From Macrostomum lignano (lineage: Eukaryota), in assembly GCA_002269645.1 (NCBI GenBank), contig NIVC01000192.1, positions 9,217-73,216 on the forward strand: 64,000 bases of DNA, in the 5' to 3' direction. Of this stretch, positions 27,577-64,000 are shown piece by piece. Position 1 is the first letter of the stretch. Each line of letters begins with the position of its first letter. The position numbers were made by a program, and so were the translations under genes. The notes under the pieces are model-generated. The model was given only the letters and a program-made list of their open reading frames with translations, was not told the DNA's origin and searched no databases.

Positions 27577-27610
<34 letters not shown>

Positions 27611-27749: not shown

Positions 27750-27799
<50 letters not shown>

Positions 27800-27918: not shown

Positions 27919-27953
<35 letters not shown>

Positions 27954-27980
27954 AACTACTAATACAAAAACAACAACAAC

Positions 27981-28062
<82 letters not shown>

Positions 28063-28077
28063 GCTACTACTACTGCA

Positions 28078-28110
<33 letters not shown>

Positions 28111-28111
28111 G

Positions 28112-28146
<35 letters not shown>

Positions 28147-28147
28147 G

Positions 28148-28180
<33 letters not shown>

Positions 28181-28199
28181 TTACTACTACTACTACTAT

Positions 28200-28236
<37 letters not shown>

Positions 28237-28237
28237 G

Positions 28238-28282
<45 letters not shown>

Positions 28283-28283
28283 T

Positions 28284-28329
<46 letters not shown>

Positions 28330-28330
28330 G

Positions 28331-28378
<48 letters not shown>

Positions 28379-28379
28379 T

Positions 28380-28411
<32 letters not shown>

Positions 28412-28412
28412 T

Positions 28413-28462
<50 letters not shown>
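27465..28462. repeat. About 1-kb (ACT)n trinucleotide microsatellite with ACA/AAT variants
   Basis: Directly visible. Gives the spurious poly-Val ORF on the minus strand. Confidence 0.97.
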
Positions 28463-36557: not shown

Positions 36558-36662
36558 AAGTACGCAGCCTTCAGATGCGCCGCGCAATAGCTGCGGCTGA
36601 GCCGTCGGTTGCACATCTGCCCATTGGGGCAGGTGTAATCAATTATTAATTATTAATTAATA
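36558..36662 (+). mobile_element. 5'-truncated tRNA-SINE, family 1
   Basis: 3' 100 bp of the family at 38118-38410 with an (ATTA)-type tail. Confidence 0.8.
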
Positions 36663-37278
36663 TTATGGTTTCTATGCACCTCCGCTTCGGAATCGCTGAA
36701 GACATAGACCTCGCTCGGGAAATCAGATACTTTTAAAAATTGAGTTGATTTCTCAGATTGAATTCTGCGTATTACAGCTTCAGAAGCATCACAGCTCACG
36801 CAAGTCTGGAATCGTGCAGAAAGAAACACCCGGGCGCAATCAACGGTAGAGCCACGAGAGACGAGACTAGTGAAAATTTCGAGTTCTCTCGCCTCCCCAA
36901 ATCTCCTTGACTCGCCTCGTCCGTCCCCTTCGAATTCGAAGGAGAGTCGCCCAACCTCTCTCACTCTCTCCGCTTGATTCGCTCAGACAGATTATGACGC
37001 TCAGGTGCGCGCTGGCGGGACGGGCAAAGGCGAAAAAGACGACTGCGGGGGGGGGTGGCGTGCGGCGTGCGCGATCCCCAAGATTCCGAGCTTCCCTTCC
37101 CAGACGTGCTCGGCCTCTGATGGGGGATTTATTCTCTCGCACGGCTGAGTCACGGTCGGGCGGAATCGGCCAGCAGGGAGGGACGGCAACGCTGAGTTCT
37201 TAGAAGCAGAAAATCGATTCGAATTGAAAACAAAGACTTCCGGGGGAGACGAATTTCTAATCGGATTTCACCGACATC

Positions 37279-40200: not shown

Positions 40201-43200
40201 ATAGGAGGGAGTGAATTGAAACAGAAGATGGATCGAGAGGAATTAAGGGGAAGGGAGGGATCGAGAAGGGAATGGATTGAGAGGGGAAGGGATCGATGGG
40301 GAAGGGATCGATGGGGAAGGGATCGATGGGGAAGGAATCGATGGGGAAGAGATCGATGGGGAAGGGATCGATGGGGAAGGGATCGATCGGGAAGGGATCG
40401 ATGGGGAAGGGATCGATGGGGAAGGGATCGATGTGGAAGAGATCGAGAGGAGAAGGGATCGATGGGGAAGGGATCGAGAGGAGAAGGGATCGATGGGGAA
40501 GGGATCGATGGGGAAGGGATCGATGGGGAAGGGATCGATGGGGAAGGGATCGATGGGGAAGGGATCGAGAGGAGAAGGGATCGATGGGGAAGGGATCGAT
40601 GGGGAAGGGATCGAGAGGAGAAGGGATCGAGAGGGGAAGGGATCGAGAGGGGAAGGGATCGAGAGGGGAAGGGATCGAGAGGGGAAGGGATCGAGAGGGG
40701 AAGGGATCGAGAGGGGAAGGGATCGAGAGAGGAAGGATCGAGAGGAGAAAGGATCGAGAGGGGAAGGGATCGAGAGGGGAAGGGATCGAGAGGGGAAGGG
40801 ATCGAGAGAGGAAGGATCGAGAGGGGAAGGGATCGATGGGGAAGGGATCGAGAGGGGAAGGGATTGATGGGGAAGGGATCGAGAGGGGAAGAATCGAGAG
40901 GAGAAGGGATTGATGGGGAAGGGATCGATGGGGAAGGGATCGAGAGGAGAAGGGATCGAGAGGGGAAGGGATCGAGAGGGGAAGGGATCGAGAGGGGAAG
41001 GGATTGATGGGGAAGGGATCGATGGGGAAGGGATCGAGAGGAGAAGGGATCGAGAGGGGAAGGGATCGAGAGGGGAAGGGATTGATGGGGAAGGGATCGA
41101 TGGGGAAGGGATCGAGAGGAGAAGGGATCGAGAGGGGAAGGATTGCGGAAAGGTCCTTGGAGCCTCGTGAGCGAGCATGTCACATCTGAAGGTCATCAAA
41201 GGTATGTAGTCAATCGCAATAAAAAGAGAGTTGCTCACTTTCGCGATTCCAGCAGGTGCACTTCGGCATGCAGACCAGCGTAGCCTGGACCGCCTTGGCC
41301 AGCGCATCGCCGAGCTTTCCAGCTGTCGGCACCTTCGTCAACCTGACTGTTCCTCTGGCGAACTCCAGCTCCTTCGACCAGCTGGTCATTGACTCCGACG
41401 GTCAAGCGCTCCTAGACCTTGTGCTGCTAGATTACTGGCCTACCCGGAACCAGTTCATGCCAGTGCTCACCATTAACTGGCCTGCGTACAACTCAGTGCA
41501 GGCTTTGGCTAGCGAGCTGGGCGCTGTGCCGGGCGAGGACTCGTGCTTCCTCTCTGTTTGCCCGGAACCGGAAGTGGCGGGTAAGCCTGTGCCTTATTGA
41601 GCTACCTGTTCTAAGCCAAATTGGCTCGTACTCCTCATATTCCTACCCCACTACCGACAAACCCACTCCCCTCATTCCTACCCCACTATCGACAACCCCA
41701 CTCCTCGCATTCCTACCCCACTAGCGACAACCCCACTCCTCGCATTCCTACCCCACTACCGACAACCCCACTCCCCTCATTCCTACACCACTACCGACAA
41801 CCCCACTCCCCTCATTCCTACACCACTACCGACAATCCCACTCCCCTCATTCCTACCCCACTACCGACAACCCCACTCCCTCATTCCTACCCCACTACCG
41901 ACAACCCCACTCCCCTCATTCCTACACCACTACCGACAACCCCACTCCCCACATTCCTACCCCACTACCGACAACCCCACTCCTCGCATTCCTACCCCAC
42001 TACCGACAACCCCACTCCCCACATTCCTACCCCACTACCGACAACCCCACTCCCCACATTCCTACCCCACTACCGACAATTCCACTCCTTGCATTCCTAC
42101 CCCACTACCGACAATTCCAATCCTTGCATTCCTACCCAAGTACCGACAACCTACTCCCGTGATTATAAATGTACAGAATTATTCTAGATTGCTCTATTGC
42201 AAACTTATTTTGAAGGAACGGAACAGACAAATATTCAAGCAATTTCATCTGGTGCCTTTACCGATTCTAAATGCGTGATGAGTGATTAAATCAGCCAAGT
42301 CCCGCCTTTGACTCCCAGGTGGATTTACGGCAATGCACGGCGTGATTCTCCTGGCTTCGCTCCTCTTCGTTGCCGGCGCCGGATTTGTTATTTTCCTGCT
42401 GGTCAGGTGAGCCAAACATCCAAGGTGGGGCTTGTGGGATCCGACAGAGCTCAGGTGCGTAACGGCTTAAACACTAGCACTGCTTTCGCTGGAAAACCAT
42501 CATCATCATCAAGAGCCTAATTCTTGATTTCTTGAGTCCATCGCGTGCTCCGAGACGTTAAAAGGGCGGATGAAGATATCAAAACTGAAGCAACTAATGC
42601 AGGCAGACAGAAATCCGATTTTCGGGCTCCGGGCGGTGCTCGGGGGCCTCGCTTTTTAGTTTTGAATCTGCATTATGAACTAAAGATCGCTAATCTGATG
42701 AGGAACGGGAAAATCCCTTTTTTGCAAACCTTCTCCAGGCGATACCAAAGCCGGAAGGAGCTGGCCAAGGGGCCCAACAAGATGCTGCTCTATCCCATGG
42801 ATGTGGAGTTCCAGAAGAACCGAATCAACAAGAGCGTTCCGGTGAGCATTGGTTTGAGACTGTTCGGCCATTAATTGATTTGAAATATGTTGCTGCATGC
42901 ATCAAATGCTGAGGGCTGTGGTACCCTGTTCTACTGCAGCCCAGAGCTGCTACCAAGGACCACTGTAGTATAACAGTACGTAAAACTCAAAGAGTATGCA
43001 ATTTTTAGGAGGCCGATTTCCTAGAAAAGTACACTGCGGAGATAAGAAAAAATCATTTTATTCATCAAAAATCAATGATTGCATTTGAACTGGGGCTGAG
43101 AAAGCTACCTTTTCTTAATTTAGCATGCACAACATGTTACTCTGTTGTACTCGTATTTTATATAGTCGTGTAGTGAAAGTTTCATTTTCATATTGTTTTC

Positions 43201-46200
43201 TAGCTATTTCATAAGCCCCAGCTAAATTTGTAAATACTCACAAGTGAAATTTGCGTTCTTGGCTTCAAAATTGATAGATATCGAAAAAGTCAACAATGAG
43301 AAAAGATAATTGGTAAACGTTGTCTACATAAAATTATTTAGACAAACAAAAATTTAATTATTTAAGGGCTTGTCTAGACAGGTCTAGGAATACCTAAACA
43401 TATGCATTTGAATGGAACTATACCTACAATAATGCCTAAATTAAAAAAGTAATCTTCACTGCCCCAAATCAAATGCAAAATCTTTGATTTTGTGATGAAA
43501 AAAATGACAAATGATTTTTCCTATCTCCTTAATGTATTTTTTTCAAGGAAATCGGCCTCCTTAAACTTACACACTCTTTGAGTTTTACGTCCTGTTATTC
43601 TACAGTGGTCCTTGGCTGATGAACGCTAAACGCTAAATAAACGCTGATTTTTGCAGAGTCTGAAGGCGGCGGACGTCACAGTGGCAGAGGTGGCCCTGCC
43701 AGGACTGCTGCAGAACCAAAACCACCAGGCTGAGACGCTCCGGAACGCTGTGGCCGAGAGGCGCTCGCTGAAGAGCCCGACCAGCGAGAACGAGGCCACG
43801 GACTCCAACACTGCGAAGTACAATGTGAGAGCTCCCTTTAATACTTTTAACGCACCGTGTAGGGCACTGATAAAGCTTGTGCATTTACTATCTATTCTTC
43901 ATTTTCAGGGAGATTTCATTCACGTTAGCTACCTGCAGTTGCCCGGTCACTCTGTGAAGAGCCGAATGATGTCGTACATTCGGATGCTGAGAGAAATCCG
44001 CAACGAAAATGTCAATCCGTTTGTTGGCTTACTGGTTGACATGGAGTACCTGGCCATGGTTTGGGATCACTGCACCAGGGGTAGCCTGAAGGTGCGTTTT
44101 GACAAACAATATTTGATAATAATGAACAATTGATTACACCTGCCCCAATTGGGCCTTATGTGCAACCGACAGCTCAGCCGCAGCTATCGCGCGGCGCATC
44201 TGAAGGCTGCGTACGGCTGTTCAGTCCAAGGACTGGGGGGTCGCCACACACACCCTCAATTACCCCAGCTAATGCTGGCACCCATTTTACAGCTGGGTTA
44301 ACTGAAGCAATGCAGAGTTATATCTTGTTCAAGGACACAAATTATTCCAATAAGATCGGGAATCGAACTCCCGACCTTCCAGTCGTAAGTCCGACGCTCT
44401 CACCACTAGGGTACAACCGCCGCAAACAAGCATACATGTGCATTAGTTGAACCAGTAGCTCTCAGTGATCAAAATCTCTCAACTCTCTCGCCTCCCAGGA
44501 CATCATCAACAACCCATCGGTGAATCTTGACTGGGAGTTCAAGCTGTCACTGCTAACGGATTTGGTCAGGGTGAGTCTTGTTGTCCATGGTAAATCTGGT
44601 AAAGCTATTCACTTCTGCTCTTTGTAAGGTAAAAAGATGCTGATCTCTCTTTCAGGGCCTTCGCTACCTGCACCACAGTCCCGTGTCAGTGCACGGAAGC
44701 CTCAACTCCAGCAACTGCGTAGTGGACGGGCGCTGGGTGCTGAAGCTGACTGACTACGGCCTAAATCAGGTGTACAACATCTACAACCATCGGCCGCAGC
44801 TTACTGACGAGCAGATGCTCTGGACGGCTCCTGAGCTGCTTCGCGAGCCGCCACCGCCCACCGGCACGCATCCGGGCTCGCAGAAGGCCGACGTCTACGC
44901 GTTCGCCATCGTCATGCAGGAGATCATCACGCGGGACTCGCCCTTCGGCATGATGGGCATGTCGGCCGAAGAGATTCTTCGTAAAGTGCGCAAGCCTCCG
45001 CCGCTTTGCCGACCGCAGGTCACTCAAAGCGAGGCGCCGCCAGCCTATATTCAGGTAAAATTGACGATGCCTCAAAACACCTGTGACTGGAGACACGTGT
45101 GTCTCGTAAAGCTCTTTTGTCTAAGCACCAGAAAGCGTCAATACGCTGTCTTGTTTTTGTCTCATCCAGGTGTTAAAACAGGCCTGGGCTGAGAATCCAG
45201 AGATGCGGCCAGACATGGACTCAGTCTACCAGACATTCAAGAGTCTCCTGCAGGGACGCAAGATGAACATCGTGGACCACATGTTCAAAATGATGGAGAA
45301 GTACTCGGCAGATTTGGAGGAGACTGTGCGGGAAAGAACAACGGAACTTGAGGTTGAAAAAAAGAAGACCGAGATGCTGATTGCTCGAATGCTACCAAAG
45401 TAAGTTTTCCGCTTCCAGATTACATGAGCATCCTGCTGTCCCAGTAGCCAAGTATCCCGCTGTTCCATTAGCCAAGTATCCCGCTGTTCCATTAGCCAAG
45501 TATCCTGCTGTTCCATTAGCCAAGCATCCTGCTGTTCAATTAGCCAAGTATCCTGCTGTTCCATTAGCCAGGTGTCCTGCTGTTCCATTAGCCAAGTATC
45601 CCGCTGTTCCATTAGCCAAGTATCCTGCTGTTCCATTAGCCAAGCATCCTGCTGTTCAATTAGCCAAGTATCCTGCTGTTCCATTAGCCAGGTGTCCTGC
45701 TGTTCAATTAGCCAAGTATCCTGCTGTTCCATTAGCCAAGTATCCCGCTGTTCCATTAGCCAAGTATCCTGCTGTTCCATTAGCCAAGCATCCTGCTGTT
45801 CAATTAGCCAAGCATCCTGCTGTTCCATTAGCCAAGTATCCTGCTGTTCCATTAGCCAAGTATCCTGCTGTTCCATTAGCCAAGTATCCCGCTGTTCAAT
45901 TAGCCAAGTATCCTGCTGTTCCATTAGCCAAGTATCCTGCTGTTCAATTAGCCAAGTATCCCGCTGTTCCATTAGCCAAGTATCCCGCTGTTCCATTAGC
46001 TAAGTATTCCGCTGTTCCATTAGCCAAATATCCTGCTGTCCCAGTTAGCCAAGTATCCTGCTGTTCCATTAGCCAAGTATCCCGCTGTTCCATTAGCCAA
46101 GTATCCCTCTGTTCCATTAGCCAGGTGTCCTGCTGTTCCATTAGCCAAGTATCCCGCTGTTCCATTAGCCAGGTGTCCCGCTGTTCCATTAGCCAAGCAT

Positions 46201-49200
46201 CCTGCTGTTCCATTAGCCAAGTATCCTGCTGTTCAATTAGCCAAGTATCCCGCTGTTCCATTAGCCAAGTATCCCGCTGTTCCATTAGCCAAATATCCTG
46301 CTGTCCCAGTTAGCCAAGTATCCCGCTGTTCCATTAGCCAAGTATCCCTCTGTTCCATTAGCCAGGTGTCCTGCTGTTCCATTAGCCAAGTATCCCGCTG
46401 TTCCATTAGCCAAGTATCCCTCTGTTCCATTAGCCAGGTGTCCTGCTGTTCCATTAGCCAAGTATCCCGCTGTTCAATTAGCCAAGTATCCCGCTGTTCA
46501 ATTAGCCAAGTATCCTGCTGTTCCATTAGCCAAGTATCCTGCTGTCCCAGTTAGCCAAGTAATCCGTTGTTCCATTAGCCAAGTATCCTGCTGTTCCATT
46601 AGCCAAGTAATCCGTTGTTCCATTAGCCAAGTATCCTGCTGCCTCAGTAGCCTGTTGTTGTTAGCAGACTGCTGTCTAGTAACTAAGTATTGAGATTTTT
46701 TAATAAAAATATCAGGTAAATCTCAATCAGCCATGAAATACTGGTGAGGGTTCATTGAGTACCCTGACTGTACAGTAGTAGAGTTAAGCATTCATAGTTG
46801 CCCAATTAATTAGGATATCTGTCTGAACTCCAATTGTTTATTGAACTATCGAACAAAGGGGTGGGACGCACCTGTGAACTCACGATTCTCCTAACCTTCA
46901 CTCCTCTTTCACTTCCTCAGTATTTTTTCTTGAAAAGTGTAAAAAAAAACACTGGCGAAAGAAAACAGACATCGAATATTTGAGGCCTATATTTTTAATT
47001 AACTCTATCCTTACCTGACGACCTTGAGACAGCAAAAATTTTTCCCGTTGACCATCGTGAGAATCAGTGTTCAAGATGAATTTTGCTACGTGGGATGCAA
47101 GCCGTCTCTCCCCCCCCCTTGCCAGTCGCTCTGTTTGTTTCTGTACTGGCCAGCCAGCACCACCCCCGCTAGATCGGACGAATGCACGATGCATCAGCCC
47201 GAGCTCTACACTGCCAGCTTAATCAGTTCAGGAAGGCTTTGAGCGGGCGATCGGCCTGTCCGTTTTGATAGCGCTGGGCAGGTGCTGGCTTGAACGGCAG
47301 GAGAGAACTCGCAGTTTGATTTCCGGCCCCAGTTATGAAATAGAAACCGGGATCGAGTCGTTTAACATTCCCCCATCAGCGAGTACAGAGACTGAGTCGG
47401 CTAAACTGCAGCAGGTCGAAATTTAGCCTTGCTTTTTAAACTAGCGTATGCGTCTCCAGCTAATTAGTGCATCTACTATCCTATTAGAGATTCCCAGTAT
47501 AAACTCGTTACAGAAACTTTCGCATTGCCCGAGCTCTTTAACTCAAAGAGTTCCTCAGTCCACTAGCCATGGTCATTAGCCGTTGGACTGACGAATAAGT
47601 AGAATAAGCCTGCAAGGAGTGTAGGATCACGGCCCTAGGCGAAGGCGCTGGAGATGCAACGCACGAGGTGACGCGTAGTGGCTTATATGGCTGTGAGGCT
47701 GGCAGAGAGGAGGGAGGACGTCAGTAGCGAGGAAGATTAGAGCGCCACGGCGAAGCGCGGACGAGCAGCGCCTCTCGCCTTGAAATTTGAGCCGGGCAAA
47801 GAAGGAAAAGGCACGACCAGAGGATGGAAGATAGCTCAGTGAGGACGAAGAGGAACTCCTAACTGACTGAGATCGGGAGAGTAGTTGCGAACCTGCTAAT
47901 TACCAGGCGAAGCGAGAGGTGCTTATGCTTAGTGACTTTCGCCAGCAGCTAAGAAGTTGCAGCTGGATGGGATGAAGCAAACGAGGGGAAAATTATCAAG
48001 TAAAAATCTTTTCCCTTGACTGATTAAACCGCTCATTTCTGCATCCCATGATGCCATTGTCCAGCCGAATGCTGCAAAACACTTTGTTGGACAGAAACTC
48101 AGAAACCTGTCACAAACCGCCACCACTCCGATCTCGCGCAGAATCGTGGCGAAAAGCCTCATGGAGGGCCAGGCTGTGGAACCGGAGGAGTTCGACGAGG
48201 TGACCATCTACTTCAGCGACATCGTCGGCTTCACAACAATCTCGGCGCTGAGCACGCCACTGCAGGTGGTTGACCTGCTCAACGATCTGTACACAATGTT
48301 CGACGAGACCTTGGAGGAGTACGATGTGTACAAGGTAATCAAGTACGCTAGGGGGGCAACTTGTTTGTAACCACCTCTTTGTCTTGCACCTCTTGCACCT
48401 CTTTGCACTGGTGCATTTTTCTCAAAACCAATGTATCTTTAGACAGTCTTCCTACTGAGCGAAGTAACTTGATCAGTCAGTTTTAGCCAGCTGTTCTGCG
48501 CCCTGTCTGACTAACCCAGATACGCTTTATAACTCTAAGGCTTTACTGTAATACTTCAGTTGACCTTGAAGTTTTCTTGAAGTGAGACTCATTTTAAACT
48601 CTGCTTCAGACCATACGGAGTCGAAGCCATTCTCAAACAGCAGCCAAATAACTTTTTAGAGAACTTTTTTGCGCTAGCATGGATATACTCGTACAAAGTT
48701 GAAGTTCAGGTGTTTCTGTGTTCTAAACGTATTACTTTTCAAGTTGTTTCGAACTGAATGAAAGTTCATTAGCAATTTGACGATCATTATTCACATTTTT
48801 AATGCAGAACAATCCATTACTACAAACAATGCATTGTCTGTAGGATCGTCATTACTACAAACAATGCATTGTCTGTAGGATCGTCATTACTACAAACAAT
48901 GCATTGTCTGTAGGATCGTCATTACTACAAACAATGCATTGTCTGTAGGATCGTCAAACAGAAAAACAATGCAAAGAATCAGCGGTCGCAGCACGTGACA
49001 ACGATTGTCTGGCGAGCGCCGGATTTATCCATTGCTTCTCACTTTCTGTAGGATACCTAAAAGAGTAAAAAAGCTAAATCATCGTCACAAATTTAATTCT
49101 GCATGATGACGTTTTCAAGTACGACTTGAAGTAGTTTCAAGTAATAACACAGGTCGTCACACCGTTGAATATTGGCAAATTTCGAAAAGACCGATTGGAT

Positions 49201-52200
49201 TCAATGTGTCTGAATGAAGCTTTAGTAGTCTTTACACCTTAAGAAAACGAAGACTAGTGTAATTCAAAGTGGCATTTCGAAATCTAGAAATATATTCGGA
49301 AGTGCAACATCCTGTGTTCTGAAGCTGTCTTAGTACATTTTATGCTCGTAAGGGTCTCTGGCCTATTTCCGCATACAAGAAGCTCAACCAAGAAACAGGA
49401 AACGCCGTTGGGATCGCCACGCTAAATCTCTCTCAGGTCACGACTGAAATCCAGCTCTATCTGTAGCATTTTCCCTACAGACAGCATTATAACAGCAGAT
49501 CGTTCAACTCCACTCCTGCTTACCTGCCCAGGTGGAGACCATCGGCGACGCCTACATGGTCGTCTCCGGCCTGCCAACCCGCAACGGAAACCGGCACGCG
49601 GGCGAGATTTCCACTGTGGCGCTGGACCTGCTGTCCCGGTGCGGCAGCTTCACCATTCGCCACATGCCGGATATACCGCTGCGACTGCGCATCGGCCTGC
49701 ACAGCGGCAGTTGCGTGGCTGGGGTGGTTGGACTCACCATGCCCAGGTGAGCGACGGCTGAACCCGCTATTCACGTTAGCCGAGTTCACCTCTTTTTGCT
49801 CGAATTTCCTTTTGAGAAAGTTATGCTAACAGGATGCAACGGTGCACTGCGGCACGACAGTTGCACCAATTACAATCAAATCACATTCCACAGCCGTTCC
49901 TCCTAATAATTCCTCCTGTAATTTTTAACAATTGGTATAGCATTTTACAGTTCATTTGGGCTTACGCGCATTTAATTTAGTCCAAGATACGTTTGCCAAA
50001 GAAACGGAGCTTTTGTCTATGGTAGCAAGGCTGGCACAGCGGCATCTGATTTGGTCCAACAAGCATCAATTTGGTCCAAACACTAGTGAGTCATTCGGAA
50101 GCTCTTGAATTCTCGCGACTGTCTGCAGGTTGTTGTGTACCGCTGGAATGTCAGCGTCTCTACCGAATATTTTCAGTCGCTTTTCCAGAGCTCTGCTGAT
50201 AGTCGAAATCTGATAACCAACTGGAACTGTTCCTTCAACTTCTGCTGTATTTTCTGCAATATCGAGTAGCAGCTGGACTTGAGGCTCTTGAGCAACTTGC
50301 CTTGGCGATTGCCACCCTTTCGCAGGCGACCGGCAGTGGTTCAACGCGCTGATGGATGCTGGAAACCAATTTTCTTTTCCATTCAGCAGCCTTGCAATGT
50401 CCTTTTGTGTGTTCACCTCTGCCGAGTGCTTCGATCACAAGCCAATGGCATTCATTCGACAGCCTAGCATATGATCAACAATCATGGGGCTGATCTTGCT
50501 CCTCCGCAGCAGTTGCAAATTAAGCTATGGACCAAATTGATGCTTGTTAGACCAAATCAATTGCCGCGTAAGCCTGAATGGGCTGCAAAAAGCTATATTT
50601 GCTAACTGTTGAATGCTACCTAAATACCTTGTCCAGTTTAAAAACATATTCCGAATGGCAGTAGCCCTGACTACCCTGTCTACGTTGCAAATCCTTGGCA
50701 ACAGTCTGTACAAGGTTTGGCCATAGACATGACAGTTTCCAGACTTCGTTAACTTCGTTGTCTATGGCCCAACCAATCTTTATTCTATACTGCTTTCAAC
50801 TTAGCATGACAAAAACAATAATTTTAATTTTACGTGACAAAGTGACAGCAGTAAAAAACTGGGTGGCTCATACGTCCTTGCCTCATGTAGCTGTCAAATT
50901 GTCACTCATCACTCTCCAATTGTGAAAACTTCACTGGATGCCGGTTTTTGTCTGTTATGTAACTCAAACTATTAAGGATTACCTTCTGAGTTTCCGAATT
51001 ACAAATATAGCAAACTTGTGTTTTTCCGCGAGGCTGATTCACAAGTTAGAATAGTTTATAAAAGTTAATCAGTATTTCTTTTGTCAGTCAAGCTTATAAC
51101 TAAGCCGATTAAGTAAAGAATCCAAAATTTTCTTGGATTTTCTTGGATATAACTAAGCCGATTAAGTAAAGAATCCAAATTTTTCTTGGAAGAAGCCACT
51201 GCCGCAGAACTGCACTCGGCCATAGACAATACAGCCAATCAAGTTAATAAAAAGCCAATGATTTGGACAGCTCGCAATGGCAGCCACTGCCGCAGAACTG
51301 CACTCGGCCATAGACAATACAGCCAATCAAGTTAATAAAAAGCCTATGAATTGGACAGCTCGCAACAGAAGCCACTGCCAAAGAACTGCACTCGGCCATA
51401 GACAATACAGCCAATCAAGTTAATAAAAAGCCATTGAATTGGACAGCTCGCAATGGCAGCCACTGCCGCAGAACTGCACTCGGCCATAGACAATACAGCC
51501 AATCAAGTTAATAAAAAGCCAATGAATTGGACAGCTCGCAATGGCAGCCACTGCCGCAGAACTGCACTCGGCCATAGACAATACAGCCAATCAAGTTAAT
51601 AAAAAGCCAATGAATTGGACAGCTCGCAACAGAAGCCACTGCCACAGAACTGCACTCGGCCATGGACAATACAGCCAATCAAGTTAATAAAAAGCCAATG
51701 AATTGGACAGCTCGCAACAGAAGCCACTGCCACAGAACTGCACTCGGCCATAGACAATACAGCCAATCAAGTTAATAAAAAGCCATTGAATTGGACAGCT
51801 CACATTTCACCTTTAGAAGATTTAGTTGAGAAAATTCCACAAAAGACGCAATAAAGGAATAACTGGTGTTAATTATGATTGCCAGCGGTTCCCAATCTAA
51901 TCTGTAGGCTCTGTAAAGCATGGAAATCTTTTTGTCTTTCAGGTACTGCCTCTTCGGAGACACGGTGAACACTGCAAGCCGCATGGAGTCCACCGGAGCG
52001 GCTTTCCGTATCCACGTGAGCCCGTTTACTAAGGCCATCCTTGACCAGCTGGGCGGCTATCACCTGCAGCTGCGAGGCGAGGTCGAACTGAAGGGCCGCG
52101 GCATGGTGAAGTCGTACTGGCTGGTTGGCAAGGACAACTTCAATAAGCCGCTGCCGGAACCGCCTGAAATTGTTGAAGGGACCGATAATCACGGGTGAGC

Positions 52201-55346: not shown

Positions 55347-55876
55347 GGAGATGATGTGTCATCTCCCACTGTGTCATCTCCCACTGTGTCATCTCTCACT
55401 GTGTCATCTCCCACTGTGTCATCTCCCACTGTGTCATCTCCCACTGTGTCATCTCCCACTGTGTCATCTCCCACTGTGTCATCTCCCACTGTGTCATCTC
55501 CCACTGTGTCATCTCCCACTGTGTCATCTCCCACTGTGTCATCTCCCACTGTGTCATCTCCCACTGTGTCATCTCCCACTGTGTCATCTCCCACTGTGTC
55601 ATCTCCCACTGTGTCATCTCCCACTGTGTCATCTCCCACTGTGTCATCTCCCACTGTGTCATCTCCCACTGTGTCATCTCCCACTGTGTCATCTCCCACT
55701 GTGTCATCTCCCACTGTGTCATCTCCCACTGTGTCATCTCCCACTGTGTCATCTCCCACTGTGTCATCTCCCACTGTGTCATCTCCCACTGTGTCATCTC
55801 CCACTGTGTCATCTCCCACTGTGTCATCTCCCACTGTGTCATCTCCCACTGTGTCATCTCCCACTGTGTCATCTCC
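55347..55876. repeat. Near-perfect 15-bp tandem array (gtgtcatctcccact)x35
   Basis: Only one variant unit seen (near 55396). Confidence 0.97.
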
Positions 55877-58800
55877 CAGCAAGAACTCGCTGCACCTCAA
55901 AGTCATCGTCGATGTAAAAATCGTCCATCGACACCGGCTCGAAGCGGGTTGCCAGACCGGCTGAAGCCTCCGCGGCAGCCGCTGCAGCGGCAGCCGTCGC
56001 TGTGGGTGCCAGAGACGAATAGCCGTCATCGTCTCGAGCTGGAGCTGCTGCCGCACATTCGCGATCATCTCCGCAGTCATTGATAGCATCCCCTCCGACG
56101 TTGAGCTCCACACTGCAGTTCAGGCTGGATGAGCAGCTCAGGTCTTCGGGGTCGCAACCGGCCTGCTCCAGGTTCACCAGTCGAGTCAGCGCAGCCACCG
56201 CCGCGGCCAGTTGGCGACTTCGCTGCTCCGTCTCGTCCAGGCGCAGCCGCAGGTAGCGGCTCTGCTCGGTGAGACTCTGAAACCGGTCGGCTGTCGCCTC
56301 TTGATTTTCGGCAGTGCCAGAGCCCCTTGCGGCAGTTAACTAACTGAAAGAGTGTCCTCCCATCAATTGAGTCCTAAAATCGCACGAATGGTGTACAAAT
56401 CAATGAAAAAAATGCTGCCTCTTGTCATCCCCTCCTGCGCAGAGCCCTCCTTAGGCTGAACCAGAGGTACCTCAAAGTAGTCAGCACGGCCCTCCATCCG
56501 TTTCTTCCATGGCTTGAGCGGTGTCTCGTCTGCGGCTCAAGCAGTGAAAACTGTGAACAATTTTTATCAGCCGTTTTTCAGCAAGGCCAGGCTCAATCAC
56601 CTCTCCGAGGTTTGCAGGCCCGAGTGCATACCGCTAACGTCCGGTACCTCAGGGACACGGAAGGAGCCAGCTTCTTCCCAACCGCTGGTGAGGAGGACCG
56701 CGCTGCAGGCGAGACAGACGGGTCTCCCTGAGCGGAATCACATTTGCTGGAAGTCTTTGGTCACGAGACGCGACCAAAATTCGGTTCGATCACGTGACTT
56801 GTACTCGGATCCGTGCGATTCAATGACTCATTTGATGGAGTTGTAAACAAACATTAATAGGGAACTTAAAAAAGCTTTAATTTAGACAATTTTATTCTCT
56901 TCTGAAAGCAGACCTTGTGCGCCAGAGAGTTGCAGACAATCTGATTGGCCAGCTGGTCAGTGTTGCGGCTGGTTCGCAGCAGGTCGCGGCGCAGTCGGCG
57001 GCTGTCCAGCTCCAAGGCGGCCAGCCGACGCTCACAGCCGGCCTCCTCGAGGCTTTCCAGCCGGCTGAACAGCTGATCGGCCTGCGATTGGCTGGCCTGG
57101 GCGCGGGCGGGTTGGGTGCGAAAGCAGGTTCGCTTTTGGAAACTCGAAACTTCACAAGCTTGCAATTTCATATCGTCAGCATCTTTAAGTTTTGAGCTGG
57201 CTAAAGTGACTACTGACTAAACAAGGGTATAGTCACAGGCCACATGCGACCCGCAAGCCTCTCTCTGGCCCTCGGGTCCTTTGAAACTTCGCAATAGCAA
57301 TTCGGCCCGCTCAAGGTTTGTGTCTTCTCAACTGTCTTCTCTCTCATTTCCTCTCCTCTCCTCTTCTCTCCTCTCCTCTCCTTTCCTCTCATTCTCTTCT
57401 CTCCATTCTCCTCTGCCTTCTCTCCTATTTCATCTCTTCTCTCCTCTCGTCTCCTCTCTTTTCGCCTTGCCTCGCCAATCCCTCCTCGACTCTCTTTTCT
57501 CCTATCTATCATCTCTCAGCTCTCTTCTCTATTCCCTCTCCTCTCTCCTCTCCTCGAGCCTGCAGTCATGCTCTAGGTTCTCTATCTGACCCTTGAAATA
57601 AAACAATTTCCGAACCCTGCTGTCGCGACTTTCCTAGTCATTTCTTAGTTCACCTTCACTTGTCTCTGTTTACTCCGTTTTCTCTCTCTGTCTAGCTCAA
57701 TCTTGTTATTCTTATCTCTCTCTCCCTTGCTGCGTTCTGATTGGCTCTCCGTTCTCGCCTCTTTCCTCAGTCGCGCACTCCACCCCCTCTCTTTATTATT
57801 CTGGGCTCAACCCCCCAAAGTAAAATGTTCTATAAATATATCGGTTTGGGCCGTGCGCCCACTTACTGCTCCTTCTGCTCCTTCAATTTAACTCCAATTA
57901 AATAGTCTTTAGTTTAGTATTTTTTCTACATGGCGCCCAATGTAAAATAATTAAGTCAATTCAGTAAGGCTGGCAAAGGCCATGCCATCGTCATAGTCGT
58001 AGCCCTCCACCAGTCATCTCGTCATTTCGTCTGTCGGCCTCATCGCTTCGTCTGTCGGCCTCATCGCTTCGTCTGTCGGCCTCATCGCTTCGTCTGTCGG
58101 CCTCATCGATTCGTCTGCCGGGGGTGCGTCCTGCGGTGTCCTCGGTCTCTCTCGGTTTCAAATTCTCGGCCGGGGCGCCTCGGGCTCGCCTGCCGGATCG
58201 TCTCTTCGCTCATCGCCTGCCAGATCGCCTCGTTAATTCGTCATTCAATTTTTTCTTTCACCATGTAGTCACAATGTAAAAAATTAAATTAATTTTTTAG
58301 GGGGGAGAGTAGATGTAGTCAGTTTTCATTTGGTTGTAACAATTTATTCATTAAAATCGCACACGTGAAATTTCTTGGTCAAATTTGCATTCACTCTAGT
58401 CTCCACAGGTTTTGTATTGAAATTCTTAGTCGAATTTGTACACCATTGTTAAATTTGCTTTAAAGTTGTTTCTTGAACTCTAATTCATAATTCTATTGGT
58501 ACTCGGGGGTGTCGCGACTTTCCTAGTCATTTCTTAGTTCACCTTCACTTGTCTCTGTTTACTCCGTTTTCTCTCTCTGTCTAGCTCAATCTTGTTATTC
58601 TTATCTCTCTCTCCCTTGCTGCGTTCTGATTGGCTCTCCGTTCTCGCCTCTTTCCTCAGTCGCGCACTCCACCCCCTCTCTTTATTATTCTGGGCTCAAC
58701 CCCCCAAAGTTAAATGTTCTATAAATATATCGGTTTGGGCCCTGCGCCCACTTACTGCTCCTTCTGCTCCTTCAATTTAACTCCAATTAAATAGTCTTTA

Positions 58801-61800
58801 GTTTAGTATTTTTTCTACACCTGCACTAGTAATTCGACGACGTAAAATTTTGAGCATAAAGAAAAGTTCTCAAATTAAAGATAAAAAACTCGTTCATTGC
58901 TACTGAAGCAAGTAGGTAGAGAAATAGGCGTAATTTAATTTCACAGAAAACTATATGATTCCCCTAAGTTTTGAAATATAGAAAAATAAAATGTTAGAAA
59001 AATAACCGAACAGCTCCGCTCTCGGCCTGCGATTGGCTGGGCTGGGGTGAAGTTTAACGAAGATATTATATCATAGATAAAAACTCCTCCATTGGTGATT
59101 AGAAGTCTTTAACTTTCAAACTTTCCCCAGCTGTAATTCTCTACTTCAGATAGAAGTTCTTCTAAGTATCTGAATTCCCGAACAGCGGGAGGGCATAGCA
59201 GTAGTTGGTACGCTGAAGGAACTCTGCCTGTACCCAGTGTAATACATGCGCTTAACTAGATGGGAGAAATCTTCGACTCTCATCACTGCCTGCTTCTCCG
59301 CCACTCCCCCCCCCCCTGACGCTCATTCCCAACGGACTTTATGCAGCTCTGCTGCTGCCGTCTCTCATTTCTGAATTAAAGATCGATATTCGACTTCCCA
59401 GCTCTTCAGCTGGCTCTCTATTTTCATCCCGGCGCTTTCTGTTTCTGTTCCACTGTTCGACTGATAGATTGAGTTCTTGGCTGTCTGATTTCAGTTCTCT
59501 TCTCTGCGATGTCATTGAGATATTTCTGGATCGGCTGAACTCTTTAGCAAGATTGAGATGGGATTTCAGAGATGGGATATGGAATGTGTGAGATTAGATA
59601 TGATGATGAAAAATGGAATCTGTGAAATGTGCTATTAGATATCTGTGAGATTAGATATCGGAGATGGAATCTGGAATCTGTGAGATTAGATATCAGAGAT
59701 GGGATCTGGAATCTGTGAGATTAGATATCGGAGATGGGATCTGGAATCTGTGAGATTAGATATGATGATGAAAAATGGAATCTGTGAAATGTGCTATTAG
59801 ATATCTGAGCTGGGATTTGGAACCTGTGAGATTAGATAATAGGAAATGGAATCTAGAATCTTTCAGATTAGATATGACGATGAAAAATGGAATCTGTGTG
59901 ATTAGATATTGGTGATCGGAGATGGAATCTGTGAGATTAGATATCGGAGATGAGTAGCTGGGTGATCAAATCGGCGAGATTAGATAATAGGAGATGGGAT
60001 CTAGAATCTGTGAGATTAGATATTTGAACTGGGCGATGGAACCTGGGAGATTAGAGATCTGAGATGGGAGTTGGGAGTTGAAATCTGTGAGACTAGATAT
60101 CAGAATTGGCCTCTGGATGTGTGAGATTAGATATCTGACATGGGATATGGGAGACAAAAGACTAGAGATAAAAACCTATAGGCGAGACGGAACAAAAATA
60201 TAAGCATGAAAGAATCTGCAAAATTCTCTGTCAGGGAAACAATCGGCACACTTGCGCTAGGTTCAGTGATGTCGGTGGCCCAGCAGTTGACAGCCGCCTT
60301 ACTCTTATCTGTAGCACAAGCACTTTCACTTTGTCGGCTCCAATAAAAGCAGAAAAATACAAGCCAGTCTGCCCTCGACTTCCCCGTTGTCAACCGTTGT
60401 CTAGTCGGCGGCGAAGATCAAAGCCCAGCATTGATGGCGAAGTGACCAGGGCGGAGGGGGGAGTAAAAAAGTATCGCGCCAGATTCGAGCAATTAATCAC
60501 GGGCGTCGGCAGCCCCAGCCGCTGCCACTATCGCATCTTGCTGTCCTCCTGGCCCCAGCGCCTCAAGCTAATGGGCTCTCAAGAAAAACTATCTGCGTCT
60601 TGCTCCCGGCTTACGGTCAGAGTTGATCTGATGCTGTCAGCGTCTCTCTCCAGGACTTCGATTCTGCACACAGCCTGGTCTAGCACGACTTCCGTCCTGC
60701 AGCGTGGGGTGTGAGAAGTACACTTAAAGTACAGCCTGCTCAACTCTAGTTTCTTGCGACGGCTAGTGAAATTGCGTGTAAGAGGCTGTGTCACCCCCAG
60801 CCTGTGTCAGCCCCATCCTGTGTCTCCCCCAGCCTGTGTCACCCAGCCTGTGTCACCCCCAGCCTGTGTCACCCACAGCCTGTGTCACTCCCAACCTGTG
60901 TCACCCCCAGCCTGTGTCACCCCCAGCCTGTTTCGCCCCCAGCCTGTGTCACCCACAGCCTGTGTCACCCCAGCCTCTGTCACCCCCAGCCTGTGTCACC
61001 CCCAGCCTGTGTCTCCCCCAGCCTGTGTCACCCCCAGCCTCTGTCACCCCAGCCTGTGTCACCCCCAGCCTGTGTCTCCCCCAGCCTGTGTCACCCCCAG
61101 CCTGTGTCTCCCCCAGCCTGTGTCACCCCCAGCCTCTGTCACCCCCAGCCTGTGTCACCCCAGCCTGTGTCTCCCCAGCCTGTGTCACCCACAGACTTAC
61201 CTGGAGCTTTGCCCTCGCCGCAACTTAGATGGAGAATCTTGTAAGACGGATTTCGTCGCCTGTTTCTTCACTTGACGCTGGGGCGAACTCTGAGGCTCAT
61301 CTCTGGCTGCTGTGGGCGGCTGTTTGCGACCCTGCTTACGAATTGTGAACTTTTACGTTTAATTTTTTTAAACGTAAATTTACGTTTAAATTTCACAGAT
61401 TTAGAGTTTTAACTGTCTAACTAACATAATTTTAACCAAGAACTACTTAGTTTTACAGTGTAACTTAATGGCCTAAAGTTAAAGTATTGCTGTTTTGCAA
61501 TGATGCATATAAATTCCAAAATCTAAACATATAAATCCCCTTATTTATTACGAGTACAAAGAAAGGTTTACAAACAATCAATGAACCACTGAAGTAGCCA
61601 TTAATAATAATAATAATAACAATAACAATAATATCTGATTACACCTGCCACAGTTGGGCCAGATATGCAACCGACAGCTCAGCCGCAGCTATTGCGCGGC
61701 GCATTTGAAGGCTGCGTACGGCTGTTCAGTCCAAGGACTGGGGGTCGCCACACACCCTCAATTACTCCAGCTAAAGCTGGCACCCATTTTACAGCTGGGT

Positions 61801-62102
61801 GAACTGAAGCAATGCAGAGAGGGTAAAGTGTCTTGCTCAAGGACACAAATTTTTCTAGTGGGGTCGAGAATCGAACCCCCGACCTTTCAGTCGTAAGTCC
61901 GACGCTCTAACCACGAGGCTACCACCCCCCATAAGATATGAAAGTCATGTTAAAAGCATTAACTTTAGATCTGTTTCCAATAAAAGTAAAAAATGAAATT
62001 CCCATCCAACTACATACATGTAGTTGGTTTTTGGCTTCAACTGCCAAAACTCTGGTTTCATTGCCTTACCTGCAGCCCCGATCTCAAAGCACTGGTTGCC
62101 AT
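55869..62102 (-). CDS. Uncharacterised coiled-coil protein, about 299 aa
   Basis: Proposed exons 62102-62070, 61331-61201, 60696-60615, 57096-56914 and 56339-55869 join GT-AG with matching phases (900 nt). Heptad-like segments EVVLDQAVCRIEVLERDADSIRSTL, LFSRLESLEE and LRLRLDETEQRSRQL. The start codon and both ends of the model are uncertain. Confidence 0.65.
57222..57595 (+). mobile_element. hAT-type MITE (374 bp), third full copy of the CT-rich family
   Basis: Ends CAAGGGT / ACCCTTG, with subterminal blocks shared with 22044 and 39400. TSD not preserved. Confidence 0.75.
57621..58819 (+). mobile_element. TRIM (terminal-repeat retrotransposon in miniature), 1199 bp
   Basis: 310-bp direct repeats 57621-57930 and 58510-58819, each TG...CA, with two substitutions seen. 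PBS TGGCGCCCAA at 57931, a short G-tract before the 3' LTR, and an exact 5-bp TSD CCTGC. TATA (tataaata) and ATTGG motifs in the LTR. The 579-bp interior has no long ORF. Confidence 0.93.
59555..60145. repeat. Degenerate about 34-bp tandem repeat (gagatgggatctggaatctgtgagattagatatc)
   Basis: Recurrent aatctgtgagattagatat core. Confidence 0.8.
60785..61195. repeat. 16-bp minisatellite (agcctgtgtcaccccc) filling most of an intron of the minus-strand gene
   Basis: About 25 units abutting the GTAAGT donor at 61200. Confidence 0.92.
61600..61930 (-). mobile_element. tRNA-SINE family 1, full length with (ATT)n tail
   Basis: Reverse complement has tagcctcgtggttag / gggttcgattc boxes, the CORE-like block and an attatt tail. 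Confidence 0.88.
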
Positions 62103-62504
62103 CTCCCAGCCTGTCGCAGCCCGCCTGTCTCCTTCGCTCACAGAAAGCAGGATCAACAGCAAAAGCAGAAAATCCGAGTATTAAAACATCTCTACTAGAA
62201 GCATTCGATTGGCCAGCATCTGGTTCGATGATGGGAGCTGCCCCCCCCCCTCAGCACTCACAAGGTCTTTCGCCAGGGTAAAGTAATCGAATTTCTGCGG
62301 ATCAAATTTCCTTCCTCATCATGTTGAACTGCTGAGATCGGTGCATCGGCCTCGGGATTCTGATCACTTGCTTACCAGAGTTCAGTTTATAGGGATTCAG
62401 TACTGACTGCTTGTGCTGTAAACTGCTCTATACTACTGGTCTGTATCAGTAGCAGATTTTGGTAAAAATGCGAATATGCAGTTTATACACAATGGATTAT
62501 TTTA

Positions 62505-62796
62505 ATTGATTACACCTGCCCCAATTGGGGCCAGATGTGCAACCGACAACTCAGCCGCAGCTATTGCGCGCGCATCTGAAGGCTGCGTACGGCTGTTCAG
62601 TCCAAGGACTGGGGGGGGGGTCGCCACACACTCTCAATTACCCAGTTAATGCTGGCACCCATTTTACAGCTGGGTGAACTGAAGCAATGCAGAGTTAAGT
62701 GTCTTGCTTAGGACACAAATTGTTCCGAGTGAGATTGGGAATCGAACCCCCGACTTCAAGTCGCGAGTCGACGCTCTAACCCTAGGCTACAGCCCC
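62505..62796 (-). mobile_element. tRNA-SINE family 1
   Basis: Near-identical to 61637-61930. Confidence 0.88.
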
Positions 62797-64000
62797 GTCA
62801 GAATTTATATACAATAAAATAATTTTATACAGTTCTTTGCCAATGAGATCTATCTCAATAGTCTGAATAATTCTGTATCTATTTATCTAAGCCTGTATCA
62901 TCTTTATAAGCCTGTAGAAGTTTGTATAAGCTTCTACCAGTCTGTATAAGCCTGTATCCATCTGTGTAAGCCTATCAGTCTGTATAATCCTGTATCAGCG
63001 TGTATAAGCCTGTATCAGTCTCTACTAGCCTCTATCAGACTGTAACCAGTGTAACAGCCTTTATAAGCTGTAGAAGCTTCTATAAGTCGTTATCTTCAAT
63101 ATTTTCTATAGGGTCAACTGCAGCAAAATACAGTTTACAGGTAATCAAATGGTCAACTTACCTTCAACGCGAATTTGGTACTTCTGGAATCATTTCTTGC
63201 TGCATCTGACTGACAGAACCCTGACAGCTAGCAAGGAAGCTGTAGTATTTTATGCTTGGAATTTGCTTACAACAGCTTGTTAATATCTGCCTCACAGGAG
63301 CACTCATTGCTCAACCAATCAGATTAGAGGTGAGGGGATAAGAAGGCGGGGTACGGGCTAAATTCGAGGGAGAAAAATGAAGCAGATCAGATTAAAGAAA
63401 CATCAGTTGTTGCAAAGATGCTCAGGAACAGGCTTATGGAATGAATTTTTTCACTGAAGACTTTCCTGCAGTGAGAACGGCGGGGTCTAAAATGATTGGA
63501 GCGCCTCAGGGAAGGCGATGTGCCATGAGGTTTTTGGCACTGAGCCAAGCGTATGCTCCGTTCTCCCCTCTCGATGCCCGGCCCCCTGTTCCACTGGAGA
63601 ATCTCTTCTGAAGACACTCAACATTTCCGCTTGAGAAAATCTTGCGTGTCTTTGACTGACAGAAAAATTAGGCAAACACCCTTCATCTCAGTCTGCCGTA
63701 TTTCGGGCTGCTCCATACAAACAGTTGCCTGCCTTATAGCTTCGATTTTTTATGAGAAAAACATTTATAGTTTTCTGTCTGGTCTTGACACGCAAGGATT
63801 TTCTCTGATACTGCAGAAAGCCGGTATGATAGGCAAAGTGTTTTGAATAACTAGGGCTTTAAGCAGATTGTGTTTCCATGAAATTCTGCAGCTGGTCATT
63901 TCAACTGAATCGCGTCATTGTTTTACTGAGTTCTTCCAAAAACAAAAGGTGAAAGTAGTTCATAAAAAATAGATTTCCTCAGGTTTCTATTTCAAAAATC

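What the first reader, a model, noticed from the sequence alone, without database searches (positions are those of the whole stretch)
57621..58819. Intact, very young animal TRIM with a Lys-type primer-binding site
Seen: 310-bp TG..CA LTRs differing at two positions by eye, a CCTGC TSD, PBS TGGCGCCCAA immediately after the 5' LTR, a G-rich tract before the 3' LTR, TATA, ATTGG and ATTAAA motifs in the LTR, and a 579-bp non-coding interior with a 21-bp x3.5 repeat. It is antisense to its host intron. Known: TGGCGCCCAA matches the start of the tRNA-Lys1,2 PBS. TRIMs are mainly described in plants, with few animal cases (e.g. taeniid tapeworms, where one is highly expressed in stem cells). Inference: a recently mobile non-autonomous LTR element that needs a Gypsy-like helper.
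Basis: partly seen in the sequence, partly recalled or inferred. Interest (0 to 1): 0.75.

Follow-up and report, generated by a model that had tools for sequence, protein, structure and literature searches.

The report
Small non-coding LTR retrotransposon, single copy
This is a real, recently inserted 1.2-kb LTR retrotransposon with no genes of its own, a known kind of element in animals, but nothing available here could show whether it belongs to a multi-copy mobile family.

Summary
The described structure is present at exactly the stated coordinates.
- The two LTRs are 310 bp each (57621-57930 and 58510-58819), have TG..CA ends and differ by 2 substitutions.
- A CCTGC 5-bp target-site duplication flanks the element.
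- TGGCGCCCAA lies directly after the 5' LTR. It matches the first 10 nt of the tRNA-Lys1,2 complement.
- The LTR carries ATTGG, TATAAA and ATTAAA.
- The 579-bp interior has no protein-family match and no known RNA-family match.

Corrections: the 21-bp repeat has 4.6 copies, not 3.5. The tract before the 3' LTR is only GGGGG. The only long purine run (AGGGGGGAGAG) lies 200 bp further upstream.

It is a genuine LTR-retroelement insertion, at the 3' end of an older dispersed repeat. At 1,199 bp with 310-bp LTRs it exceeds the classical TRIM limits (under 1,000 bp, repeats of 100-250 bp). It fits the looser limit of under 1,500 bp.

The decisive criterion, further copies with different target-site duplications, could not be tested. 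The host genome is in none of the searchable collections, and every indirect search was empty. The Gypsy helper, recent family activity and intronic position remain inferences.

TRIM-like elements are already reported in ants, bees, tapeworms, bivalves, fish and nemerteans. This is a new member of a known kind, of low to moderate interest.

The parts
57616..57620 (.). Left copy of the 5-bp target-site duplication, CCTGC
57621..57930 (+). 5' LTR, 310 bp, TGT...ACA ends, 71% pyrimidine on the + strand
57740..57744 (+). ATTGG within CTGATTGGCTC, a CCAAT box read on the other strand; possible U3 promoter element (inferred)
   Evidence: read directly
57831..57836 (+). TATAAA box in the 5' LTR. It predicts a transcription start near 57860-57866 (inferred)
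57897..57902 (+). ATTAAA poly(A)-signal candidate. The copy in the 3' LTR is at 58786-58791. It predicts an R region of about 50-60 nt and a very short U5 (inferred)
57931..57943 (+). Primer-binding site TGGCGCCCAAtGT. Ten contiguous nt are complementary to the tRNA-Lys1,2 3' end, or 13 nt if position 11 forms a G.U wobble
   Evidence: PMC1084362, PMC1635307
57931..58509 (+). Non-coding interior, 579 bp
58026..58121 (+). 21-bp tandem array (TTCGTCTGTCGGCCTCATCGC), 4.6 copies, 97% matches. It is followed by a GC-rich stretch at 58122-58240 (65% GC)
58299..58309 (+). AGGGGGGAGAG preceded by a T-run. This is the only canonical-looking polypurine tract, but it lies 200 bp upstream of the 3' LTR. 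Its role is unexplained
58505..58509 (+). GGGGG directly before the 3' LTR; a short polypurine-tract candidate
58510..58819 (+). 3' LTR, 310 bp
58820..58824 (.). Right copy of the target-site duplication, CCTGC
57255..57620 (+). Older dispersed repeat (head, CT-rich minisatellite, tail) into whose last bases the element inserted. Paralogous copies are at about 22038-23990 and 39394-39850

Best explanation
This is one complete, evolutionarily recent integration of a small non-coding LTR retroelement (1,199 bp) in an animal-type genome. It encodes nothing, so it must have been copied in trans.

Proposed cycle:
1. RNA polymerase II starts about 30 nt downstream of the LTR TATAAA box and terminates after the ATTAAA in the 3' LTR. 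This gives an R-to-R RNA of roughly 0.9 kb.
2. That RNA is packaged by the Gag of an autonomous LTR element.
3. tRNA-Lys(CUU) anneals to the primer-binding site at the LTR edge and primes minus-strand synthesis.
4. A purine run primes the plus strand.
5. The helper's integrase joins the TG..CA ends into the target and makes the 5-bp CCTGC duplication.

Shown here: the anatomy, the lack of coding capacity and the insertion signature.

Inferred: the promoter and poly(A) sites, the U3/R/U5 borders, the primer tRNA in this host, and the existence and type of the helper.

I think it more likely than not that the element belongs to a multi-copy TRIM-like non-autonomous family rather than being a one-off, but this was not testable.

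Confidence is about 0.9 that it is a genuine non-coding LTR-retroelement insertion. It is about 0.6 for the full statement, including family membership.
For: - The two 310-bp LTRs are 99.35% identical with exact TG..CA borders.
- The 5-bp target-site duplication is present.
- The only exact TGGCGCCCAA in 64 kb sits at the first base after the 5' LTR. It matches the published tRNA-Lys1,2 complement over 10 nt.
- TATAAA lies upstream of ATTAAA in the LTR, in the order needed for an R region.
- Ten of the longest stop-free frames gave no significant Pfam match.
- No tRNA, 5S or ribozyme match was found.
- With one duplication copy removed, the joined flanks continue the alignment with two paralogous copies of the surrounding older repeat for about 6 nt past the junction: CCCTGC|ACTAG against CCCTGCCTTAG and CCCTGACTTAG. 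This is modest support for a simple insertion.
- All other dispersed repeats in the window are 93% identical or less. This LTR pair is the youngest repeat there.
Against: - No second copy, solo LTR or related element was found in the window, the viral contigs (14, 15), the metagenome contigs (16, 18), the prokaryotic genome contigs (17, 18), exact look-ups of its ORFs (12, 50-52), or the 5.8-billion-protein database searched with its concatenated frame translations (59). These negatives are weak, because the host genome itself is absent from those collections.
- The polypurine tract next to the 3' LTR is only 5 G.
- The canonical-looking tract lies 200 bp upstream.
- No unusual RNA structure that might mark a packaging signal was seen (z = -0.40 and +0.76).
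Confidence: 0.6

Rival explanations
1. It is a one-off, internally deleted copy of an autonomous LTR retrotransposon or endogenous retrovirus-like element. The coding region was lost by template switching during reverse transcription or by deletion after integration. There has been no independent propagation of the short form.
For: - Only one copy was seen in everything that could be searched.
- The interior looks like a patchwork of compositionally different blocks: 47% GC leader, 62-65% GC repeat block, and a 27-32% GC 3' part.
- A canonical T-run plus purine tract is stranded 200 bp from the LTR. This would fit a rearranged remnant.
- At 1.2 kb with 310-bp LTRs it is larger than classical TRIMs.
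Against: - No trace of gag, pol or env remains in the ten long frames scanned.
- The primer-binding site and LTR ends are intact.
- Non-autonomous LTR families of this size are common in animals. Helenus, for example, spans 311-1263 bp (PMC10886601).
- The absence of other copies is uninformative without the host genome.
Confidence: 0.28
2. It is not a retroelement. The structure would be a local segmental duplication of a 310-bp segment in a genome very rich in tandem repeats, and the retroelement-like features would be coincidental.
For: The window is extremely rich in mini- and microsatellites. The element carries a 21-bp array and sits beside a CT-rich array.
Against: - The repeat is exactly 310 bp, and the sequence differs immediately outside both borders.
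- A period-889 duplication predicts no flanking 5-bp duplication, no TG..CA ends, and no tRNA-complementary 10-mer at the first base after the repeat.
- The joint chance probability is far below 1e-8.
Confidence: 0.02
3. It is an assembly artefact. A solo LTR or a longer element would have been collapsed or mis-joined into an LTR-interior-LTR structure.
For: None directly. Repeat-rich regions are prone to misassembly, and no reads could be examined.
Against: - The two LTRs differ at two positions.
- The flanks carry a clean duplication and continue an older repeat's alignment.
- There are no Ns in the window.
Confidence: 0.03

Closest known systems
[quoted passage not shown]
   Same: Two direct terminal repeats, a primer-binding site at the start of a non-coding interior, a purine run at its end, a 5-bp target-site duplication (plant TRIMs also make 5 bp, PMC3532108), and no protein.
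   Different: The element is 1,199 bp with 310-bp LTRs. The classical limits are under 1,000 bp and 100-250 bp. Plant TRIMs use a tRNA-Met primer site and this one matches tRNA-Lys. Copy number is unknown here.
ta-TRIM of taeniid tapeworms (PMC4558846)
   Same: An animal non-autonomous LTR element with TATA and poly(A) signals in the LTR, a tRNA primer site next to the 5' LTR, and a proposed Gypsy-type helper that shares LTR ends and primer site.
   Different: ta-TRIM uses tRNA-Leu (8-9 nt), makes mostly 4-bp duplications, and has more than 1,000 loci with proven massive stem-cell expression. None of this is known here. Sequence similarity was not compared.
PbTRIM of ants (PMC3532108)
   Same: A small non-coding LTR element in an animal with young LTR pairs, often near or in genes.
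   Different: PbTRIM is 480-781 bp with LTRs of 152-184 bp. It has a ~15-nt tRNA-Leu primer site, a ~15-nt polypurine tract and 4-bp AT-rich duplications.
biv-TRIM of bivalves (PMC6934838)
   Same: An animal TRIM with a short G-rich polypurine tract (GGGGAGA) and no identified helper.
   Different: biv-TRIM has 202-218-bp repeats, a 77-80-bp interior and no canonical primer-binding site. The element here has a clear one.
[quoted passage not shown]
   Same: Comparable size range (Helenus 311-1263 bp). Some animal Helenus families also use tRNA-Lys. Ajax also makes 5-bp duplications.
   Different: Those families carry a tRNA- or 5S-derived sequence in the LTR. None is detectable here. The LTR has a TATA box instead.
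Drosophila Gypsy (PMC1635307)
   Same: An 11-nt primer site, TGGCGCCCAAC, for tRNA-Lys,2 directly after the 5' LTR. The element shares its first 10 nt.
   Different: Gypsy is autonomous (gag, pol, env). The shared primer site is also found in other retroelement groups, so it does not identify the helper.

Membership tests
LTR retroelement (structural definition) | Two direct long terminal repeats ending TG...CA | tested here: met
   310-bp LTRs, 99.35% identical, TGT...ACA ends
LTR retroelement (structural definition) | Target-site duplication of 4-6 bp | tested here: met
   CCTGC on both sides
LTR retroelement (structural definition) | Primer-binding site complementary to a tRNA 3' end, next to the 5' LTR | tested here: met
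   TGGCGCCCAA at offset 0, unique in the window. It equals the first 10 nt of the tRNA-Lys1,2 complement. The host's own tRNA was not available
LTR retroelement (structural definition) | Polypurine tract directly upstream of the 3' LTR | tested here: inconclusive
   Only GGGGG abuts the LTR. The 11-nt purine run lies 200 bp upstream
TRIM, classical definition (as stated in PMC6934838 and PMC4717578) | Total length under 1,000 bp | tested here: not met
   1,199 bp
TRIM, classical definition (as stated in PMC6934838 and PMC4717578) | Terminal repeats of 100-250 bp | tested here: not met
   310 bp
TRIM, operational criteria of Gao et al. 2016 (PMC4717578) | Element under 1,500 bp without gaps | tested here: met
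   1,199 bp, no N
TRIM, operational criteria of Gao et al. 2016 (PMC4717578) | No retrotransposon proteins | tested here: met
   Ten of the longest stop-free frames scanned, with no Pfam match better than E = 0.04, all unrelated families. The longest start-to-stop ORF is 62 aa
TRIM, operational criteria of Gao et al. 2016 (PMC4717578) | [quoted passage not shown] | not testable with these tools
   The host genome is not in any searchable collection. All indirect searches were empty
Cassandra, Helenus and Ajax (TRIMs with a polymerase III promoter) | 5S rRNA- or tRNA-derived sequence inside the LTR | tested here: not met
   ARAGORN found none. Rfam found none at gathering score and none at E <= 10 over 57400-59050
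Retrozyme | Hammerhead ribozyme in the terminal repeats | tested here: not met
   No ribozyme family reached significance. The best match was RAGATH-13 at 22.8 bits against a cutoff of 80
Gypsy-dependent non-autonomous element | An autonomous Gypsy element in the same genome sharing LTR termini, primer-binding site and duplication length | not testable with these tools
   No reverse transcriptase or integrase ORF was noticed among the window's ORFs of 90 aa or more. These were not scanned against Pfam. The host genome is unavailable

The most novel reading that the evidence does not exclude
The element is the visible tip of a currently active, polymerase II-driven TRIM-like family in an animal lineage with no close relative in public protein data. 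The family would be primed by tRNA-Lys and mobilised by an unrelated-looking Gypsy or errantivirus-type helper. As in taeniid tapeworms, it would be abundantly transcribed and would donate promoters to nearby genes. The stranded internal T-run plus purine tract would then be a functional second (central) plus-strand primer, which has not been described for a TRIM.
Probability: 0.1. Interest if true: 0.45.

Novelty: new member of a known kind. Interest (0 to 1): 0.25.

Why it matters
If the family is multi-copy, it adds one more animal lineage to the short but growing list of hosts with TRIM-type elements. It would also indicate that LTR-retrotransposition machinery using a tRNA-Lys primer has been active recently in this genome.

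The insertion lies a few hundred bases from GC-rich minus-strand ORFs, so its LTR promoter could influence a neighbouring gene. The empty and filled site would make a convenient polymorphism marker.

None of this changes current understanding of how such elements work.

Tried and rejected
1. **Other copies in the window.** BLASTN of the LTR and of the interior, plus an all-against-all self-comparison, found none.
2. **Exact-pattern scans.** I scanned the LTR-end/primer-site junction and the LTR start in viral contigs and found nothing. The junction pattern in metagenome and prokaryotic genome contigs gave 11 loci. All were 19-23-nt chance matches in bacterial contigs with no further similarity.
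3. **Exact look-ups of ORFs.** Four ORFs from the LTR and interior were looked up in the assembly index and none was found.
4. **Protein database search.** One search of the 5.8-billion-protein database used the element's concatenated frame translations. It gave no hit at E <= 0.001.
5. **Host identification.** The VRK-like exon had a best match of 45% identity. The GDH exon had a best match of 72%, about equal to a mollusc, an annelid, an arthropod, a hemichordate and vertebrates. Metagenomic contigs with a similar exon gave no clue. The lineage stays unresolved.
6. **RNA features.**
   - Rfam and ARAGORN found no small-RNA modules in the LTR.
   - Folding of the leader and the 3' part gave z-scores of -0.40 and +0.76, so there is no evidence of special structure.
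7. **Is the 3' part of the interior a degenerate LTR fragment?** Local alignment scored no better than shuffles.
8. **Host gene.** Pfam scans of neighbouring ORFs on both strands did not define a gene, so intron versus upstream position stays open. The only match was a below-cutoff DUF3491 hit in a repeat-derived frame.
9. **Literature search** with a motif from the 300-bp dispersed repeat found no papers.
Full report
**1. Observation**

- The 5' LTR is 57621-57930 and the 3' LTR is 58510-58819. Both are 310 bp.
- They differ at LTR position 202 (A/T) and position 233 (G/C). Both changes are transversions.
- Similarity stops exactly at the TG and CA ends.
- CCTGC lies immediately outside both ends.
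- TGGCGCCCAA begins at the first base after the 5' LTR. It is the only exact copy of that 10-mer on either strand of the window.
- The LTR contains ATTGG (position 120, inside CTGATTGGCTC), TATAAA (211), CCAAT (274) and ATTAAA (277).
- The interior is 579 bp.

Two details need correcting. The 21-bp array has 4.6 copies. The 'G-rich tract' abutting the 3' LTR is only GGGGG. The single long purine run, AGGGGGGAGAG preceded by a T-run, lies at 58299-58309, 200 bp upstream of the LTR.

**2. What it is**

The combination of features is the signature of integration by a retroviral-type integrase after tRNA-primed reverse transcription. Those features are exact 310-bp repeats, TG..CA ends, a 5-bp flanking duplication and a tRNA-complementary 10-mer at offset zero. 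A local duplication in this repeat-rich genome would predict none of the last three.

Published sequences give the 18-nt complement of tRNA-Lys1,2 as TGGCGCCCAACGTGGGGC (PMC1084362). The functional Drosophila Gypsy primer site is the 11-nt TGGCGCCCAAC (PMC1635307). The element reads TGGCGCCCAATGTAAAAT. That is 10 contiguous matches, then a T where C is expected (a G.U wobble in RNA), then GT, then no match. A 10-11-nt site is demonstrably sufficient in Gypsy.

The element encodes nothing.

- The longest start-to-stop ORF is 62 aa.
- Ten of the longest stop-free frames, from both strands, gave only insignificant Pfam matches to unrelated families.
- There is no tRNA, 5S, hammerhead or other Rfam family in or around it, even at E <= 10. 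It is therefore not of the Cassandra, Helenus, Ajax or retrozyme types.
- RNA folding of the leader and of the 3' part is no more stable than shuffled controls.
- The interior has no detectable similarity to the LTR.

**3. Surroundings**

The window is eukaryotic and animal-like. On the + strand it carries:

- a mitochondrial-type glutamate dehydrogenase gene;
- a VRK-like kinase gene;
- a receptor guanylate cyclase gene, with ANF-receptor (weak match), kinase-homology and cyclase domains, ending at 52198.

The host has no close relative in the protein database. The best identities were 45% for the VRK exon and 72% for the GDH exon, spread evenly over several phyla. I could not name the lineage.

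The element sits at the very end of an older dispersed repeat. That repeat has a conserved head, a CT-rich minisatellite and a conserved tail (57255-57620). Two paralogous copies lie at about 22.0-24.0 kb and 39.4-39.85 kb. When the two flanks are joined with one CCTGC, the paralogue alignment runs through the junction for about six more bases before the older repeat ends. This is modest but independent support for a simple insertion.

Minus-strand ORFs with a coiled-coil-like, GC-rich character lie at 55872-56339 and 56869-57216. The second is preceded by a plausible splice acceptor. No domain or homologue evidence defines a gene. Whether the element is in an intron or upstream of that gene cannot be decided.

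**4. Search for relatives**

Everything reachable was negative.

- No other LTR or interior fragment is in the window. The LTR pair is the only ~99% identical dispersed repeat there.
- Viral contigs gave nothing.
- Metagenome and prokaryotic genome contigs gave only 19-23-nt chance matches.
- No exact ORF products are on record.
- No protein in the 5.8-billion-sequence database resembles any frame of the element.

The host's own 259-aa VRK ORF is also absent from these resources. These negatives therefore say little about copy number in the host.

**5. Mechanism (inferred)**

- The TATAAA at LTR position 211 predicts a start near position 241-247.
- The ATTAAA at position 277 predicts cleavage near the LTR end.
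- This gives an R region of about 50-60 nt, a very short U5, and an R-to-R RNA of about 0.9 kb.
- Both LTR differences fall in the predicted U3.
- The RNA would be packaged and reverse-transcribed by proteins of an autonomous element using tRNA-Lys(CUU). It would then be integrated with a 5-bp staggered cut.
- The plus-strand primer is uncertain. For this copy, priming must have occurred at or next to the GGGGG, because the 5' LTR does not include the 199 bp that follow the internal purine tract. That internal tract may be a second (central) primer or a relic.

The helper's superfamily cannot be inferred. The tRNA-Lys1,2 site is used by Gypsy elements (PMC1635307, PMC10886601) and also by spumaviruses (PMC3386198). 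Five-bp duplications occur in several superfamilies, and the animal Helenus families thought to depend on Gypsy make 4 bp (PMC10886601).

**6. Age**

Two differences in 310 bp give K = 0.0065. The Poisson 95% range is about 0.0008-0.023. With an assumed neutral rate of 1-5 x 10^-9 per site per year, this corresponds to roughly 0.6-3 million years. The rate for this host is unknown. 'Young' is justified relative to the other repeats in the window (93% identity or less). 'Very young' or 'currently mobile' is not shown.

**7. Comparison with known families**

- By the classical definition (under 1,000 bp, repeats of 100-250 bp; PMC6934838, PMC4717578) the element is too large to be a TRIM.
- By the operational criteria of Gao et al. 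2016 (PMC4717578) it passes two of three: under 1,500 bp and no retrotransposon protein. The third, multiple copies with different duplications, is untested.
- It differs from ta-TRIM and PbTRIM, which use tRNA-Leu and make 4-bp duplications.
- It differs from biv-TRIM, which has no canonical primer site and an ~80-bp interior.
- It differs from Helenus, Ajax and Cassandra, which carry a small-RNA module in the LTR.
- TRIM-type elements are now documented in Hymenoptera, taeniid cestodes, bivalves, fish and nemerteans (PMC10886601). An animal example is no longer exceptional.

**8. Verdict**

The element is a genuine, structurally complete, non-coding LTR retroelement of recent origin. Calling it an active TRIM family with a Gypsy helper goes beyond the evidence. 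It is best filed as a new member of a known kind, with low to moderate interest, pending a copy count in the host genome.

Noticed in passing
window 58272-58321: A canonical-looking T-run plus purine tract (TTTTTTAGGGGGGAGAG) sits 200 bp upstream of the 3' LTR. It is preceded by CAATGTAAAAAATTAA, which resembles the sequence just after the primer-binding site (CAATGTAAAATAATTAA, family D10, 75%). It is bracketed by two ATGTAGTCA 9-mers. It looks like the remnant of a minimal 'primer site - spacer - purine tract' interior that was later expanded, or a central plus-strand primer.
   Followed up: partly
window 57255-57620, about 22038-23990, about 39394-39850: A dispersed repeat with a conserved ~100-bp head, a long CT-rich minisatellite core (26/52-bp units at 22.2-23.8 kb) and a conserved ~70-bp tail. 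The element studied here inserted into the last bases of one copy.
   Followed up: partly
window 36560-36666, 38146-38410, 44108-44422, 61613-61929, 62503-62797: A ~300-bp dispersed repeat with five copies or fragments at 86-93% identity on both strands. By eye, one end has box A/box B-like motifs (GAGTTCGATTCCC), suggesting a tRNA-derived SINE. Neither ARAGORN nor Rfam recognises a tRNA there.
   Followed up: partly
window 57077-57101 and 59022-59046: A 25-nt motif, TCGGCCTGCGATTGGCTGG[C/G]CTGGG (24/25 identical, containing a CCAAT box on the other strand), lies on both sides of the element. The two copies would be about 740 bp apart in the empty site. The first copy lies inside the minus-strand ORF 56869-57216 (family D9).
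   Followed up: no
window 5153-7057 and 10625-13101: Two large arrays of a 24-bp satellite (GATTATTGCACTTGATAAACCAAG; 48- and 359-bp higher-order periods). They are bordered by 17-18-bp GGATGCTTGCTATCTG arrays and by ~300-bp repeats in inverted orientation at 2878-3182, 4536-4821 and 9993-10297.
   Followed up: no
window 27465-28462: A 1-kb (TAC)n microsatellite with about 333 copies, just downstream of the VRK-like gene. Overall, TRF reports 61 rows for the 64-kb window, many of them overlapping descriptions of the same array, and many arrays lie in introns of the guanylate cyclase gene.
   Followed up: no
window 16655-20951, 24800-26803, 37279-52198 (+ strand): Three animal-type genes lie in tandem orientation: glutamate dehydrogenase (last exon about 200 aa), a VRK-like kinase with a long first coding exon, and a receptor guanylate cyclase. 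None has a close relative in the protein database (best 72% and 45% identity for the two tested), so the host lineage is poorly sampled.
   Followed up: partly
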